A stretch of DNA of 64,000 nucleotides, from IMG/VR virus record IMGVR_UViG_3300020469_003050, positions 186,001 to 250,000 of that record. One strand, 5' to 3'. Under the pieces are notes generated by a model. The model was not told the origin of the DNA and ran no database searches. It saw only the letters and a program-made list of their open reading frames with translations. The translations under genes were made by a program, and so were the position numbers. Of this stretch, positions 18,788-55,252 are shown in pieces. Numbering within the stretch: position 1 is the stretch's first letter; every line of letters starts with the position of its first letter.

Positions 18788-19486
18788 ATGGAACAACTTC
18801 CAAATAGTAATGGATATACTATTGTACGTGATTATTTACCAGGAATAGCGATAGAACAATTCAGAATGTGGGCAATGAACCCTAATAATGCTCATAGAGG
18901 CAACGGGTCAGATGGGATTTACTACGATAAACATGATGGAAAACGAACATATGATGTTTGGTGGACAACAGCACCACCTAAAGAAATGTGGTTACCAGTA
19001 GTTTTAGGACTGAAAAAATATATTGATGTATTATTTGGGTCTATTCAATGGGGAATTCATGCAGTTGATTGTATTACTACTGCACCTCAATCAAGTAAAA
19101 TCTATGCACATATAGATACCCCTTATCGATTCGAAAAATATGCTAAGGTAGATGAGACACTAGGTGTACAAATAATTATACCTCTTAATGCTTTTACTTT
19201 AGAGAATGGCGGCACTGCATATCTTCCAGGTTCGCACTTAGAAAATTTATATTATAAAGATATCGAAGATAATCAACAACACTATAATGATAGATTAGTC
19301 AATGAAGGTCATCAATTTTTAGCAAAAGCAGGTGATGTATTAATGTATGACGGTCGAACATTACATAGCACAATGCCTAACAAATCTAATTTATATAGGA
19401 GTGCCTTACTTATAAATGCATTACGTGAACATGTACTTGAAGATGCTCTTTTGTTAGATAATAACACAGATAACCTTAAAACTTGA
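18788..19486 (+). CDS. Phytanoyl-CoA dioxygenase (PhyH)-family Fe(II)/2OG oxygenase
   Basis: HID triad start, FTLENGGTAYLPGSH, AGDVLMYDGRTLHSTMPNKS...R. Confidence 0.85.
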   Translation: MEQLPNSNGYTIVRDYLPGIAIEQFRMWAMNPNNAHRGNGSDGIYYDKHDGKRTYDVWWTTAPPKEMWLPVVLGLKKYIDVLFGSIQWGIHAVDCITTAPQSSKIYAHIDTPYRFEKYAKVDETLGVQIIIPLNAFTLENGGTAYLPGSHLENLYYKDIEDNQQHYNDRLVNEGHQFLAKAGDVLMYDGRTLHSTMPNKSNLYRSALLINALREHVLEDALLLDNNTDNLKT

Positions 19487-19557
19487 CAAAAATAGCTATT
19501 TGTAGTTAAATAGAAACTATAATAAATTGATTCGAAACATTACGGAGCGAGATTTAA

Positions 19558-48047: not shown

Positions 48048-48686
48048 ATGACTGAATTCACAGAAGAATGGATTAGACTTAATAATTTCAAATTTGCTAT
48101 GTCTAATGAAGTAGCAAGATTACCAGAAACTGAACTAGATAGAAAACTAATAGATAGACAATTACCACCATTTGTACAGGCTTCATATCCAGATAAGAAA
48201 GATATCAATATACTTGATATTGGCTGTAACGAAGGCTATGCTATGGAAAAATTTTCCGAGTTGGGATATACCAACGTTCAGGGAATTACTATTGAAAAAG
48301 AAGAATGGGATAAATGTAAAGCAAAAGACTTAAAAGTGCATCTTATGGATTATAACTTTAATCAAGTAATGAACAACTATTTTCATATTGTATGGATGCG
48401 ACAATCATTACAGTTTTCTCACATGCCTTTTTATACTATGTTAGAACTCAATAGAATGATGAAAATCAATGGTTGGGCTTACATAGAAGTACCACATTCA
48501 GCGAATCAACACAAATATTATGCTACATTGCATCCGGATAATTATAGATTGTTTATGATTCGTGCAGGTTTTGAAGTAGTACAATACGACTCATATGAAC
48601 TATCTTCTGGTGATGAAAAAGAAAATCATGTCTTTTTTGCGTTAAATAAAAGAAGAAACGTAACTTTACCTGACGCCACTGCTTAA
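48048..48686 (+). CDS. Class I SAM-dependent methyltransferase
   Basis: ILDIGCNEG motif I, VQGIT, ELNRMMKINGWAYIEVP. Confidence 0.8.
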   Translation: MTEFTEEWIRLNNFKFAMSNEVARLPETELDRKLIDRQLPPFVQASYPDKKDINILDIGCNEGYAMEKFSELGYTNVQGITIEKEEWDKCKAKDLKVHLMDYNFNQVMNNYFHIVWMRQSLQFSHMPFYTMLELNRMMKINGWAYIEVPHSANQHKYYATLHPDNYRLFMIRAGFEVVQYDSYELSSGDEKENHVFFALNKRRNVTLPDATA

Positions 48687-48728: not shown

Positions 48729-48757
48729 TTGACATACTATGCAACTTATGATATTCT
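48729..48757 (+). promoter_or_regulatory. sigma70 early promoter
   Basis: TTGACA-17 nt-TATTCT with TG extension. Confidence 0.6.
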
Positions 48758-48781: not shown

Positions 48782-49099
48782 ATGTTTAATTGGTTAAACG
48801 GTACAAGTACAAAAAAATCTTTTTCTAAATTAGAAAAAGGAGAAACGATGAAAACATCAAAACAAGACAGAATAATCAATGCACTAAAAGACGGAGAGGC
48901 ATTGACGGAAGCAACTATCAAAAATAGATATGGTGTTGCTAATCCGAGAGCAACTATCAGTGCTTTGAGAATGAAAGGTTACGCCGTATATGCTAACAAA
49001 AGCAAACACGGTAAAACTGTGTACAGACTCGGCGCTCCACTAAGAAGGGTTGTAGCCGCTGGTTACAGAGCCCTAGCAGACGAAAAAGTGTTTGGGTAA
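48782..49099 (+). CDS. Winged helix-turn-helix protein
   Basis: KQDRIINALKDGEALT...RYGVANPRATISALRMKGYAVY...YRLG; alternative start at 48848. Confidence 0.65.
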   Translation: MFNWLNGTSTKKSFSKLEKGETMKTSKQDRIINALKDGEALTEATIKNRYGVANPRATISALRMKGYAVYANKSKHGKTVYRLGAPLRRVVAAGYRALADEKVFG

Positions 49100-49426: not shown

Positions 49427-49475
49427 AAAACTTGACATTATAGTGATTCGTGTTATTATATATACATAATCAAAA
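49427..49475 (+). promoter_or_regulatory. Early promoter copy 1 (with GANTC site)
   Basis: TTGACA-16 nt-TATTAT with TG extension, TGATTCG at 49444-49450; 43/49 identical to 50943-50991. Confidence 0.75.
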
Positions 49476-49492
49476 GAGAGGGACTAAACATT

Positions 49493-49915
49493 ATGGCTTA
49501 TATATCAACTAACGAAGTTAAAGAAGTAAGAAAAGCATTAAAAGAAAAGTTCGGTAAGAATATTAAATTCTCAGTAACACGTGACCATTATACAGGTATT
49601 CGTGTTGCAATTATGGAAGGTGTAATGGACTTCTATAATGATGGAGACATGGATCACACTGATAAGTATTCAGGTCGGGTTCATAAGTTTGATGGATACT
49701 CTCAAATCAATCATTATCACACACATTTTTATGGCAAGTTTGCATCGTTGTTTGACGATATAAAAGAAATTTGTCATACTGCTCCTGCTAAAGCTGAAGG
49801 CGGTAGAGCATACTACGATAACTCAGATGCCATGATTGACTACTTTGATACTGCATTTTATGTAAGCATCAATGTTGGTAAATGGGACAAACCTTATATT
49901 CAAAAGGCGGCATAA
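49493..49915 (+). CDS. Early protein, LPD29-like
   Basis: YISTNEVKEVRKALKEKF..IKFSV, YYDNSDAMIDYFDTAFY...VGKWDKPY; family label tentative. Confidence 0.5.
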   Translation: MAYISTNEVKEVRKALKEKFGKNIKFSVTRDHYTGIRVAIMEGVMDFYNDGDMDHTDKYSGRVHKFDGYSQINHYHTHFYGKFASLFDDIKEICHTAPAKAEGGRAYYDNSDAMIDYFDTAFYVSINVGKWDKPYIQKAA

Positions 49916-49920
49916 TTTCA

Positions 49921-50061
49921 ATGTACATAGTAAAGGTGAAAGAGACTGGTGAAGTTGTAGCATATTGTTCCGACTGGAAAGATGCTCTATCATATTTTGC
50001 TAGTGGTAAAATCGATAAAGTAACATATGTTATCGAACAAGAAGTGGAAAAGAAGAAATGA
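49921..50061 (+). CDS. 46-aa hypothetical protein
   Basis: MYIVKVKETGEVVAYCSDWKDA...KKK*; ATGA overlap with the next gene; not in the ORF track. Confidence 0.6.
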   Translation: MYIVKVKETGEVVAYCSDWKDALSYFASGKIDKVTYVIEQEVEKKK

Positions 50062-50315
50062 ATTTGAAGAACCAAACTTTAGAAGAGGCTGTCTCTAAAA
50101 ATATTCCGGTATATTTGGTATACAAGGAAGACACTAAAGAGATTTTAGAATGGTGGCCTTTCGGTGAGGGACTAGCAAGTTCCAGTGCAAGTATGCGTAA
50201 CAATATGCATGGACCTGATAGTCATAATTATGCAAGTTGGAAAGATTACGTAGTGATACGTGATAATCACAACAAGCATCTTAAACAATTGGAAGAAATA
50301 GAACGGAGATTATGA
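50058..50315 (+). CDS. Hypothetical protein
   Basis: 85 aa, coupled overlaps on both sides. Confidence 0.6.
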   Translation: MNLKNQTLEEAVSKNIPVYLVYKEDTKEILEWWPFGEGLASSSASMRNNMHGPDSHNYASWKDYVVIRDNHNKHLKQLEEIERRL

Positions 50316-50959
50316 TGCCTGCATGTAAAGGAGATACGTATTCGGTTCCACGCCCGTTTTGTTTAACAGAGGGTTGTGATAATTTGGCACACAATACTGC
50401 ATCAGCGGCTAAGCCAGTCTGGCGTAAATATTGTGGTAAGTGTCATACGATACGTAGAAAGAATTTTCAAAATTTATCAGCTAATTTATCTAAAAGTCAA
50501 TATCCTACTTGTTGTATAAAAAACTGTAGGAAAAAAGTAACACTATTAGGAACAGACCATCATGGTAATTTAAAGTTTTCTCAATACTGCGAAAAACACG
50601 GAGGAGTCCCATTTCATTTAACGTGGAGAAAACCTGCATGTGATAATATAAATGGTAAAGGAATGTTATCAGATAGAAGTCCTATTGGGTTTAATTGTAC
50701 AACTTATATACATTACGACCCGCCCCTTCCTAAGGGAACAAAGTGGTTAGTAGATTATGGCTTCCCACAACCAATGTTACAAGTTGACCATATAGACGGC
50801 CATCCATATAATGAACCATTAGATGGGTCTAATTTTCAGACTTTATGTGCTTGTTGTCATAACTATAAAACTTGGAAATCTGGTGATGGACAAACCGCAG
50901 GTAGAAAAACCGCACAAAAATCAACAAATAATAATGTTGTCCAAAACTTGACAATATAG
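50312..50959 (+). CDS. HNH endonuclease with Cys-rich zinc modules
   Basis: LQVDHIDG..YN....NFQTLCACCHNYKT HNH core, plus C-x4-C...CxxCH and CCIKNC...CEKH modules. Confidence 0.8.
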   Translation: MMPACKGDTYSVPRPFCLTEGCDNLAHNTASAAKPVWRKYCGKCHTIRRKNFQNLSANLSKSQYPTCCIKNCRKKVTLLGTDHHGNLKFSQYCEKHGGVPFHLTWRKPACDNINGKGMLSDRSPIGFNCTTYIHYDPPLPKGTKWLVDYGFPQPMLQVDHIDGHPYNEPLDGSNFQTLCACCHNYKTWKSGDGQTAGRKTAQKSTNNNVVQNLTI

Positions 50960-50991
50960 CGAATCGTGTTATAGTATATACATAATGAAAA
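50943..50991 (+). promoter_or_regulatory. Early promoter copy 2 (with GANTC site)
   Basis: TTGACA-16 nt-TATAGT with TG extension, CGAATCG at 50960-50966. Confidence 0.75.
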
Positions 50992-51014
50992 TTAACACAC
51001 AAAGGAGTGAACAT

Positions 51015-52022
51015 ATGAGTGAGAACATAGTAGCACAAATTGAAAAAGGCACATACAGAAATCAATCTGTAGAAGGTGCGTTTCCCGTAGTGCAGGAACT
51101 TAAACAAGCTAAAGACGGTAGTTGGTTTATTACTGTTAATGCTGAGGACACTAAGTTTAAAAGTTCTAAAATTAGAGTTAAAGTTAACCCAGAAAATGTA
51201 AAAGTTTCTGAAGGTACTGTTGAATCAATCAACGAGTCTGATGATGATGCAATGAATAGGATTGCAGAAAGGTTTGCAATTCTTGATGAAATGACCGAGG
51301 CAACAATCGATGGTGTTGTTAGAGGTATGGTAGTTTCAGGCCCTCCAGGTGTTGGTAAAACATATGGTGTTGAGCAAGTACTTGAGAAAGATTCAATCTT
51401 TGATATGATGGCTGATAAGCCTCTTAGACATACTTTTGTAAAAGGTACAATGTCTGCGATTGGTCTTTACTCTACACTTTACAAATACTCTGATCCAAAG
51501 AGTATCGTAGTACTAGACGATTGTGATAGTATTCTTTTTAATGAGGATGCACTAAACATTCTTAAGGCCGCTCTTGATAGTGGTAAGAAGAGGAAGATTT
51601 CTTGGAACTCTGACTCGCATTTCTTAAGAAGGGAAGGTGTTCCTGATACTTTCGAATTCAAAGGTTCAGTTATCTTTATCACTAACTTGAAATTTGATAA
51701 AGTTAAAGGTAACAAAATCAAAGACCACTTGGAAGCAATTCTTTCAAGGTGTCACTATCTTGATTTGACTATGGACACTGCAAGAGATAAGATTTTGAGA
51801 ATCAAACAGATTGCTAGAGACGGTGGTTTATTTGATACTAAAGGTCTTACTAAGGATCAAGAAGTTGAGATTATCGATTTCATGGTTGAGAATCAAAAGA
51901 AACTGAGAGAAGTTTCTTTGAGAATGGCTCAGAAAATTGCAGACCTTAGAAATATGTCTAAGTCAGGAGATAGATGGAAGAGTTTAGCCGAGTCAACTTG
52001 TATGAAGAGGTCAGCGGCTTAA
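51015..52022 (+). CDS. Phage AAA-type ATPase
   Basis: SGPPGVGKT Walker A, VVLDDCD Walker B, VIFITN, SRC; AAGGAG RBS before ATG 51015. Confidence 0.8.
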   Translation: MSENIVAQIEKGTYRNQSVEGAFPVVQELKQAKDGSWFITVNAEDTKFKSSKIRVKVNPENVKVSEGTVESINESDDDAMNRIAERFAILDEMTEATIDGVVRGMVVSGPPGVGKTYGVEQVLEKDSIFDMMADKPLRHTFVKGTMSAIGLYSTLYKYSDPKSIVVLDDCDSILFNEDALNILKAALDSGKKRKISWNSDSHFLRREGVPDTFEFKGSVIFITNLKFDKVKGNKIKDHLEAILSRCHYLDLTMDTARDKILRIKQIARDGGLFDTKGLTKDQEVEIIDFMVENQKKLREVSLRMAQKIADLRNMSKSGDRWKSLAESTCMKRSAA

Positions 52023-55175: not shown

Positions 55176-55252
55176 GGACCCGTAGTTCAGCTGGATAGAA
55201 CGCCTGTCTACGAAACAGGAGGTCAGAGGTTCGAATCCTCTCGGGTCCGCCA
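55176..55252 (+). tRNA. tRNA-Arg (anticodon ACG), CCA encoded
   Basis: Acceptor GGACCCG/CGGGTCC, D arm GTTC/GAAC, anticodon arm CCTGT-CTACGAA-ACAGG, T arm AGAGG-TTCGAAT-CCTCT, G discriminator plus CCA. Confidence 0.95.

What the first reader, a model, noticed from the sequence alone, without database searches (positions are those of the whole stretch)
49427..50991. Twin early promoters with a positioned GANTC (CcrM/GcrA-type) motif
Seen: two 49-nt elements (49427-49475, 50943-50991) are 43/49 identical. Each is TTGACA, a 16-nt spacer and a TG-extended -10, with TGATTCG or CGAATCG ending 3 nt before the -10 box; one mismatch falls exactly on the N of GANTC. A further TGATTCG lies at 19528-19534 near another TTGACA. 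Established: GANTC is the alphaproteobacterial CcrM methylation site, and the sigma70 cofactor GcrA prefers YGAKTCG, which both copies match (the second on the minus strand). Inference: an alphaproteobacterial host, with early transcription tied to GANTC methylation or the host cell-cycle regulator.
Basis: partly seen in the sequence, partly recalled or inferred. Interest (0 to 1): 0.6.

Follow-up and report, generated by a model that had tools for sequence, protein, structure and literature searches.

The report
Phage promoters with fixed GANTC box
About twenty near-identical host-type promoters of a widespread marine giant phage all carry the word GANTC, which alphaproteobacteria methylate, at the spot where their cell-cycle factor GcrA docks on promoters; this suggests, but does not prove, that the phage ties its transcription to its host's epigenetic cell-cycle machinery.

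Summary
The two 49-nt elements are real (43/49 identical). They are two members of a family, not a twin pair. The complete 342.6-kb marine jumbo phage genome has 18 strict copies, all on the + strand, against 0.03 expected. Each copy is a full sigma70-type cassette. It has an A-tract, CTTGACA, seven variable bases, an invariant GA(A/T)TC at about -21..-17, R-TG-n-TAnnnT, a CA start, a short leader with a Shine-Dalgarno sequence, and ATG. Relatives down to about 75% protein identity keep the box while neighbouring spacer bases vary. Deeper relatives lack it.

GANTC is the most avoided interrupted palindrome in this phage and in a box-bearing relative, but not in a box-less relative or in gammaproteobacterial-host kin. 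Box position and flanks match published GcrA boxes (-20±1, YGAKTCK).

Against: no phage GcrA or DNA methylase was found, and the host is unidentified. Phosso (a Sinorhizobium phage) has TTCCT at the same place. The promoters are already near-consensus. "Early" timing is not shown.

Verdict: partly supported. A GcrA/CcrM-coupled -20 box is the leading mechanism (about 0.4). A phage-specific reader of the box is nearly as likely.

The parts
49427..49475 (+). Promoter cassette, copy A. A-tract plus C 49427-49431; -35 TTGACA 49432-49437; variable 7 nt; GATTC box 49445-49449 (7-mer TGATTCG 49444-49450); TG 49451-49452; -10 TATTAT 49454-49459; predicted start at A 49466 after C 49465.
   Evidence: start site predicted only
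50943..50991 (+). Promoter cassette, copy B. -35 TTGACA 50948-50953; GAATC box 50961-50965 (7-mer CGAATCG 50960-50966); TG 50967-50968; -10 TATAGT 50970-50975; predicted start at A 50982. The -35 overlaps the 3' end of the HNH gene.
49493..49915 (+). First gene behind copy A: 140-aa protein with an LPD29 domain. A Shine-Dalgarno-like GAGAGGGA lies upstream.
   Evidence: RNA contig of run X15 begins at 49484.
50312..50959 (+). HNH endonuclease gene lying between the two promoters. The A-to-B spacing varies among relatives (1516 bp here, 885 bp in L014).
51015..52022 (+). First gene behind copy B: AAA-type ATPase. The likely start is ATG 51015, behind GGAG 51004-51007. The ORF lister's start is 50985.
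   Evidence: 59 relatives in IMG/VR. RNA contig begins at 51002.
48729..48757 (+). Box-less extended -10 promoter of the second class. It stays box-less in relatives.
19483..19534 (+). TTGACA (19483-19488) with TGATTCG (19528-19534) 39 nt downstream. It is not a family member. The 7-mer would lie downstream of a start set by the TTAAAT -10 candidate.

Best explanation
The elements are two of about 18-20 copies of one expression cassette used by a cosmopolitan marine jumbo myophage. The phage has a T4-like core and belongs to the Atu_ph07/Phosso/PA5oct/Rak2 supergroup. Its host is probably an alphaproteobacterium.

Shown: each cassette is a near-consensus promoter for the host's housekeeping sigma factor (A-tract, CTTGACA, 16-nt spacer, R-TG-n-TAnnnT). 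A short leader, a Shine-Dalgarno sequence and an ATG follow 52-61 nt after the start of the -35.

Shown: inside the spacer, GA(A/T)TC at about -21..-17 is as invariant as the -35. It is kept by purifying selection.

Inferred: this box is a docking site for a protein that sits on the spacer next to sigma. The best named candidate is host GcrA. GcrA rides on sigma70 domain 2 and binds CcrM-methylated GANTC (best site TGATTCG, broadly YGAKTCK), centred at -20. There it stabilises polymerase binding and open-complex formation. If so, about half of the phage's sigma70-type promoters would fire best in cells that contain GcrA and on GANTC-methylated phage DNA. The rest of the genome would be purged of GANTC to avoid stray sites.
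For: - Family size and strand bias: 18 vs 0.03 expected, all on +.
- Invariance of G, A, T and C next to a variable 7-mer.
- Conservation in relatives: every orthologous promoter in the clade with at least 75% ATPase identity keeps the box. G001 (about 81% identity) has 10 copies with an identical CGAATCA-TG-CTATATT block and fully variable upstream 6-7 nt. The reverse complement of CGAATCA is TGATTCG.
- Flanks: 35/38 distinct boxes fit YGAKTCK on one strand, where 25% is expected for a random NGANTCN.
- Position: GcrA boxes are centred at -20±1 in the spacer, and the cryo-EM promoter has GAATC at -22..-18. The consensus is TGATTCG / YGAKTCK, centred narrowly around -20.
- Host: alpha_tmRNA at 122.6 bits, E 1.7e-34. 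G001 also has a permuted tmRNA. Nearest cultured portals are Phosso 54% and Atu_ph07 52%.
- GANTC is the most depleted of 16 interrupted palindromes here (O/E 0.66, z -10.3) and in G001 (0.64, z -11.2).
- It is not depleted in the box-less relative G003 (0.98).
- It is not depleted in Pseudomonas, E. coli or Vibrio phage kin (0.98-1.11), but is in Atu_ph07 (0.79).
- Coding O/E is 0.54 and intergenic O/E is 1.01. This is the pattern reported for CcrM-bearing alphaproteobacteria.
Against: - No methylation or binding data exist.
- The phage has no GcrA, N6_N4 or D12 methylase. The one weak hit is a radical-SAM enzyme. Methylation would therefore depend on a host enzyme that is cell-cycle restricted in model species.
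- Phosso, on a true CcrM/GcrA host, has a different conserved block (TTCCT) at the same place. Atu_ph07 has none.
- Deeper marine relatives have GATATC or only ATC there.
- One own copy (genome 338266) has lost the box yet keeps the rest of the cassette.
- N is only A or T.
- GANTC depletion outside promoters does not depend on flanks (0.62 vs 0.65).
- A promoter with a perfect -35 and an extended -10 needs little activation.
- The two alphaproteobacterial orders reached by weak host hints lack GcrA (0/41 and 1/31).
- Start sites are predicted, not mapped.
Confidence: 0.4

Rival explanations
1. The -20 box is read by a phage-encoded (or otherwise unknown) DNA-binding protein, not by GcrA. This could be an activator or shut-off repressor that co-evolves with its promoters. 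The match to GANTC would then be coincidence. GANTC would be avoided elsewhere in the genome to prevent titration or ectopic binding.
For: Lineage-specific blocks at the same place occur in related phages. Phosso has 39 promoters, most with TTCCT(G/A)TG. The Rak2-like E. coli phage has ATGTGATATAAT. The 68-71% marine clade has GATATC. Box presence and genome-wide avoidance co-vary between clades, which this model also predicts. N is restricted to A/T, and the depletion is limited to GAWTC. Two promoter classes stay stable over evolutionary time: 18 with the box and 21 without.
Against: No candidate protein was identified. It requires three coincidences: the word, its position and flanks matching a known host system; an alpha-type tmRNA; and a GAWTC-limited depletion also seen in Agrobacterium phage Atu_ph07, which has no such box.
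Confidence: 0.33
2. There is no dedicated reader. The block is part of an unusually long core promoter contacted by polymerase itself (sigma region 3, beta-prime zipper, spacer geometry). Alternatively, the whole cassette is kept uniform by duplication and gene conversion, helped by mobile HNH genes.
For: The conservation runs from -39 to about +10, not only over the box. R at -16 and TG belong to the known extended -10. An HNH gene sits between copies A and B, and their spacing varies among relatives. T4 early promoters are likewise conserved beyond the hexamers (my own knowledge).
Against: Homogenisation does not explain a fully variable 7-mer embedded between invariant blocks, nor G001's ten copies with identical boxes and unrelated upstream 7-mers. 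Base-specific reading of -21..-17 by polymerase is not known. It does not explain the purge of GANTC from the rest of the genome.
Confidence: 0.17
3. GANTC matters only as a restriction or modification word. Host HinfI/TfiI-type systems drive the avoidance, and the promoter copies are leftovers or methylation-sensing switches that do not involve GcrA.
For: Many palindromes are avoided: GATC O/E 0.25, AGCT 0.53, TCTAGA 0.09, AAGCTT 0 of 25 expected. GAWTC is a known type II recognition word (TfiI; my own knowledge).
Against: Restriction pressure would remove the promoter copies, not fix them. G001 shares the GANTC avoidance but not the GATC avoidance, so the two have different causes.
Confidence: 0.07

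Closest known systems
GcrA-activated sigma70 promoters of Caulobacter (for example PcsM, with GAATC at -22..-18)
   Same: GANTC core in the -35/-10 spacer centred near -20. Flanks fit TGATTCG / YGAKTCK. The promoter is of the housekeeping-sigma type. GANTC is scarce elsewhere in the genome.
   Different: Here the promoters belong to a phage. They are near-consensus and AT-rich, occur as about 20 near-identical cassettes, and have only A/T at N. Methylation, GcrA binding and even the host are unverified.
CtrA-box control of phage promoters in Alphaproteobacteria (phiCbK, Brevundimonas phage Delta; "lytic deferment")
   Same: A phage would wire its transcription to a host cell-cycle regulator through that regulator's sites in phage promoters.
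   Different: A different regulator and word. No TTAA-N7-TTAA lies within -150..+80 of any copy. That study scanned phage genomes for GcrA motifs and found no positional signal.
T4-type early promoters
   Same: Many strong host-sigma70 promoters on one strand of a T4-related genome, conserved beyond the two hexamers, with an A-rich upstream part and an extended -10 (my own knowledge).
   Different: T4's conserved positions are not a palindromic methylation word. Early timing is not shown here. No T4-type TATAAATA late motif is enriched.
Promoter family of Sinorhizobium jumbo phage Phosso
   Same: A related phage (portal 54%) with dozens of TTGACA-N7-block-(G/A)TG-TTA promoters. Its conserved 5-nt block lies in exactly the same place.
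   Different: The block is TTCCT, not GANTC, and Phosso shows no GANTC avoidance (O/E 0.93).
Dam (GATC)-sensitive phage promoters (P1 cre, Mu mom)
   Same: Phage promoter activity linked to host adenine methylation within or near the core promoter (my own knowledge).
   Different: A different methylase and word, single promoters rather than a family, and gammaproteobacterial hosts.

Membership tests
Sigma70-type extended -10 promoter | -35 hexamer close to TTGACA | tested here: met
   TTGACA invariant in 17/17 copies, preceded by AAAAC
Sigma70-type extended -10 promoter | TG one base upstream of a TAnnnT -10, with a spacer of 16-18 nt | tested here: met
   TG in 16/17 copies, T23 A24 ... T28 invariant, spacer 16 nt (17 in a few)
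Sigma70-type extended -10 promoter | Lies upstream of and co-oriented with genes; occurs far more often than chance | tested here: met
   39 on +, 1 on -, 2.0 expected. 17 of the 18 strict copies lie between ORFs. For 10 of the 14 fetched downstream stretches the ATG is 52-61 nt after the start of the -35, with a Shine-Dalgarno sequence
Sigma70-type extended -10 promoter | Transcripts start 6-8 nt after the -10 | tested here: inconclusive
   Metatranscriptome contigs begin at 49484 and 51002, just 3' of both promoters, but one contig spans copy A, and contigs cannot show starts
GcrA box (GcrA/CcrM-dependent promoter) | GANTC core | tested here: met
   G, A, T, C in 17/17 copies; N = A or T
GcrA box (GcrA/CcrM-dependent promoter) | Extended preference YGAKTCK (best site TGATTCG) | tested here: met
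   35/38 distinct boxes fit on one strand. Copy A is TGATTCG. G001's ten boxes are its reverse complement. The 3' R is also explained by the extended -10
GcrA box (GcrA/CcrM-dependent promoter) | Centred at -20±1 (or -30±2, or +2..+30) relative to the start site | tested here: inconclusive
   Centre is -19 if the conserved CA is -1/+1 (literature). The start site is not mapped. The optional second GAWTC abutting TTGACA is centred at about -26, outside -30±2
GcrA box (GcrA/CcrM-dependent promoter) | Adenines of the box are N6-methylated (CcrM) | not testable with these tools
   No kinetic or nanopore signal was available. No DNA methylase was found in the phage
GcrA box (GcrA/CcrM-dependent promoter) | The host encodes GcrA and CcrM | tested here: inconclusive
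   Host unknown. The alpha-type tmRNA argues for an alphaproteobacterium. The two orders reached by weak hints lack GcrA (0/41, 1/31). The first is a poor host candidate because its genomes show no GANTC or GATC avoidance
GcrA box (GcrA/CcrM-dependent promoter) | Transcription depends on GcrA and on the box | not testable with these tools
   Needs in vitro transcription or reporters
CtrA-controlled phage promoter | TTAA-N7-TTAA in the promoter region | tested here: not met
   18 sites genome-wide (43 expected). None lies within -150..+80 of any copy
Phage early promoter class | Drives genes expressed first after infection | not testable with these tools
   Downstream genes are small ORFans, ATPases, a MoxR/VWA pair, a polysaccharide lyase and a SleB-type hydrolase. 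The structural block of the window has none. No time course exists

The most novel reading that the evidence does not exclude
A cosmopolitan marine jumbo phage has hard-wired about half of its host-polymerase promoters to the alphaproteobacterial CcrM-GcrA epigenetic module. It does this by placing a top-ranked GcrA box at -20 and purging GANTC from the rest of its genome. Transcription would then depend on host cell-cycle state and on the methylation state of the phage DNA. Methylation state could also tell the incoming genome from freshly replicated, unmethylated copies, and so act as a built-in temporal switch. This would be the first case of phage promoters built around GcrA boxes.
Probability: 0.33. 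Interest if true: 0.8.

Novelty: new variant of a known kind. Interest (0 to 1): 0.62.

Why it matters
Phages of alphaproteobacteria are known to exploit CtrA. A systematic scan for GcrA sites in cultured phages found nothing. A selected GANTC box at the GcrA position, in a phage found in many ocean metagenomes, would extend host cell-cycle and epigenetic hijacking to GcrA/CcrM and to uncultured marine systems. It would also give a sequence-only host marker: box plus GANTC avoidance plus an alpha-type tmRNA. It offers a compact natural promoter set (with the box, without it, and one natural box loss) for testing how a sigma cofactor acts on already strong promoters.

Tried and rejected
- Megablast of the locus against GenBank phages: no match.
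- Low GC as an argument against an alphaproteobacterial host: rejected. Kin on high-GC hosts (host GC from my own knowledge) are also about 33-37% GC.
- Phage ccrM or gcrA: none found. The only weak N6_N4 hit is a radical-SAM/SPASM enzyme. No sigma70 region 2 either.
- Promoter pattern in IMG/VR: 5 loci. Four are unrelated phages with a chance match; one (L005) is a relative.
- Exact tmRNA tag pattern in GTDB genomes: nothing.
- A shorter tag-start pattern gave mostly Desulfovibrionaceae genomes, plus two "Rickettsiales bacterium" MAG contigs. One contig (L168) is itself a phage contig.
- BLAST of the phage tmRNA against 401 alphaproteobacterial genomes: only T-arm matches, so no fine placement.
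- Box-promoter pattern in the same 401 genomes: 2 hits, uninformative.
- The order of MAG G006 (about 30% GC, 0.8-2 Mb, tags ANDNEMALAA) as host: weakened. Two of its genomes show no GANTC or GATC avoidance. Co-binning may simply reflect low GC.
- Flank-specific purge of high-rank GcrA sites: not seen (0.62 vs 0.65).
- T4-type late motif TATAAATA: not enriched.
- Protein-atlas look-ups of the hydrolase and the Fe-S protein: no host signal.
- Metatranscriptome contigs cannot fix start sites.
- Papers on marine jumbo phages gave no host for this lineage.
Full report
**What the sequence shows**

The two 49-nt elements at 49427-49475 and 50943-50991 are 43/49 identical. Each has TTGACA, a 16-nt spacer, TG one base before a TAnnnT -10, and TGATTCG (copy A) or CGAATCG (copy B) ending 3 nt before the -10. 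One mismatch falls on the N of GANTC.

**Context**

The window is bases 186001-250000 of a single 342,607-bp contig with 34.8% GC. It is an IMG/VR virus record rated complete, with a 93-bp terminal repeat. It encodes a T4-like portal, a large terminase, a tail sheath and a class I ribonucleotide reductase. By portal protein, the nearest cultured phages are:
- Sinorhizobium phage Phosso (54%)
- Pseudomonas phage PA5oct (52%)
- Agrobacterium phage Atu_ph07 (52%)
- Rak2-like E. coli phages (46%)

The same DNA occurs nearly letter for letter in marine, seawater and viral metagenome runs from 13 studies. It is therefore a cosmopolitan, uncultured marine jumbo phage. Low GC is a trait of this phage group whatever the host, so it says nothing about the host (host GC values from my own knowledge).

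**A family, not a twin**

- A Hamming scan of the genome found 17 copies, all on the + strand.
- A strict pattern finds 18 on +, none on -, and 0.03 expected in 100 Markov simulations.
- The broader class TTGACA-N13-15-TGnTAnnnT has 39 sites on +, 1 on -, and 2.0 expected. Of these 39, 18 carry the GANTC box.

In 17 aligned copies the conserved parts are AAAAC, TTGACA, the G, A, T and C of the box (17/17 each), R, TG, and T-TA---T. Then come a CA about 6 nt after the -10 and a TAAT-containing leader. The 7 nt after TTGACA vary, and N is A in 14 copies and T in 3.

If the CA is -1/+1, the box spans -21..-17. For 10 of the 14 fetched downstream stretches, an ATG with a Shine-Dalgarno sequence lies 52-61 nt after the start of the -35.

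The genes behind the copies are small ORFans, an LPD29 protein, AAA ATPases (one with a DUF2201 VWA/metallopeptidase partner), an FG-GAP protein, a polysaccharide lyase and a SleB-type hydrolase. The structural block of the window has no copy. "Early" timing is plausible but not shown.

**Selection on the box**

The ATPase gene behind copy B has 59 relatives in IMG/VR, from 100% down to 48% identity.
- In every relative with at least 75% identity, the orthologous promoters keep GA(A/T)TC at the same place (shifted by 1 nt once). The upstream 7 nt and the post -10 region change. N flips between A and T in orthologues.
- A 342-kb relative (G001, about 81%) has ten copies with an identical CGAATCA-TG-CTATATT block behind unrelated 6-7-mers.
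- Relatives at 68-71% have GATATC there. Relatives at 48-62% share only ATC.
- A neighbouring box-less promoter (window 48729) stays box-less in relatives, so the two classes are stable.

**Match to the GcrA system**

Published GcrA boxes sit mostly at -20±1 (also -30±2) in the spacer, or at +2..+30. The cryo-EM promoter has GAATC at -22..-18. The consensus is TGATTCG, or more broadly YGAKTCK. Of 38 distinct boxes from this phage and the fetched loci, 35 fit YGAKTCK on one strand. Two of the three exceptions come from unrelated phages. Copy A is TGATTCG itself, and G001's boxes are its reverse complement. The 3' R is also what an extended -10 prefers, so the flank evidence is weaker than it looks.

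**Host**

ARAGORN found a permuted tmRNA, with tag ANDNYQPEMAMAA. Rfam scores it as alpha_tmRNA, full length, at 122.6 bits and E 1.7e-34. G001 has one too. None of the five cultured kin has a tmRNA in the 280-400 kb of each that was fetched. Together with the Rhizobiaceae-infecting relatives, this supports an alphaproteobacterial host. Finer placement failed.

A related phage contig is binned in a "Rickettsiales bacterium" MAG (G006). Genomes of that order (0.8-2 Mb, about 30% GC) have alpha tmRNAs in 32/41 genomes, GcrA in 0/41 and N6_N4 methylases in 5-6/41. Two of those genomes show no GANTC or GATC avoidance (O/E about 1.0-1.1), unlike the phage. I take the co-binning as compositional.

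A cellular MAG locus (L161, G007) has a true alpha tmRNA with tag ending AMAA and a 7Fe ferredoxin gene beside it. The phage also has that ferredoxin (66% identity) directly after its tmRNA. Only 1 of 27 tmRNA loci shares this adjacency. G007's order has GcrA in 1/31 genomes. These are leads, not a host assignment.

[quoted passage not shown] GcrA is missing from reduced lineages such as Pelagibacter.

**Genome-wide GANTC**

- GANTC is the most depleted of the 16 interrupted 5-mer palindromes (615 observed, 930 expected, z -10.3).
- By composition, O/E is 0.54 in coding DNA and 1.01 between genes. GATC is equally depleted in both (0.27 and 0.21).
- G001 shows the same GANTC depletion (0.64, z -11.2, rank 1) without GATC depletion. 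The box-less relative G003 shows none (0.98).
- Among cultured kin, Atu_ph07 is depleted (0.79). Phosso is not (0.93). The Pseudomonas, E. coli and Vibrio phages are not (0.98-1.11).
- The depletion is limited to GAATC and GATTC, here and in Atu_ph07, and does not depend on flanks.

"Scarce overall, spared between genes" is the pattern reported for CcrM-bearing alphaproteobacteria. The box and the avoidance travel together.

- The phage has no GcrA and no DNA adenine methylase.
- Phosso, on a genuine CcrM/GcrA host, has its own conserved block (TTCCT) at the same spacer place. Atu_ph07 has none.
- One own copy has lost the box.
- These promoters are already near-consensus.
- Start sites are unmapped. 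Metatranscriptome contigs begin at 49484 and 51002, but one spans copy A.
- The Phosso parallel is the main reason to keep a phage-encoded reader of a lineage-specific -20 block as a nearly equal rival.

**Verdict**

The alphaproteobacterial-host inference is independently supported. The CcrM/GcrA mechanism fits the word, position, flanks and genome-wide avoidance, but remains untested. I put it at about 0.4. A phage-specific reader of the box is at about 0.33, and no dedicated reader at about 0.17.

A 2022 survey looked for GcrA motifs in phage genomes and found no signal. If the mechanism is true, this is a new variant of host cell-cycle hijacking.

Noticed in passing
genome 281167-281489 (+), outside the window; L071:668-990: Phage-encoded permuted alphaproteobacterial tmRNA (RF01849, 122.6 bits; tag ANDNYQPEMAMAA). 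A 7Fe FdxA-type ferredoxin gene follows directly (L071:1017-1355). A cellular alphaproteobacterial MAG (L161) has the same two genes side by side.
   Followed up: partly
window 50312-50959: An HNH endonuclease gene lies between copies A and B. Its 3' end overlaps the -35 of copy B, and the A-to-B distance differs among relatives (1516 vs 885 bp). It looks like a mobile insertion between two promoter cassettes.
   Followed up: partly
Sinorhizobium phage Phosso, PV764938.1 (W02), genome-wide: Its own promoter family: TTGACA, 7 variable nt, then (GG)TTCCT(G/A)TG-TTA. There are 39 pattern hits. The conserved 5-nt block lies exactly where this phage has GANTC. I know of no described reader for this block.
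   Followed up: partly
whole genome: Broad palindrome avoidance: GATC O/E 0.25, AGCT 0.53, CGCG 0.27, TCTAGA 0.09, AAGCTT 0 of 25 expected, TGATCA 0 of 19, CTGCAG 0.24. The close relative G001 does not avoid GATC (0.98). The restriction pressure therefore differs between near relatives.
   Followed up: partly
L168/L189 (G006:C8) and G025:C3, C5: Contigs of relatives of this phage, carrying the phage-type tmRNA at about 107-110 bits, sit inside GTDB species-representative MAGs labelled "Rickettsiales bacterium". This is likely bin contamination and could mislead host prediction and tmRNA surveys.
   Followed up: partly
genome 338266 (+), outside the window: A natural variant of the cassette in which the box reads CATTTAG instead of CGAWTCG. 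The -35, extended -10 and leader are intact, so it is a ready-made control promoter.
   Followed up: no
genome 80842, 169063, 337736 and relatives L014, L017, L024-L026, L043: Some copies carry a second GAWTC directly abutting TTGACA. This gives a 7-nt direct repeat, GAWTC-NN-GAATC, centred at about -26 and -19. The 68-71% clade has an analogous GATAT-GATATC tandem.
   Followed up: partly
genome 95598-99203 (-), L001: Two adjacent radical-SAM/SPASM enzymes (475 and 341 aa). Their role is unknown; it could be peptide or nucleic-acid modification.
   Followed up: no
window 48048-48686 and 48782-49099: Just upstream of copy A lie a class I SAM methyltransferase (small-molecule type by Pfam) and a winged-helix HTH_39 protein. 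The latter is an untested candidate DNA-binding regulator.
   Followed up: no
window 55176-55252 and whole genome: tRNA-Arg(ACG) in the window. The genome has ten tRNAs in all, clustered near 36.8-45.6 kb and 341.6-342.2 kb.
   Followed up: no
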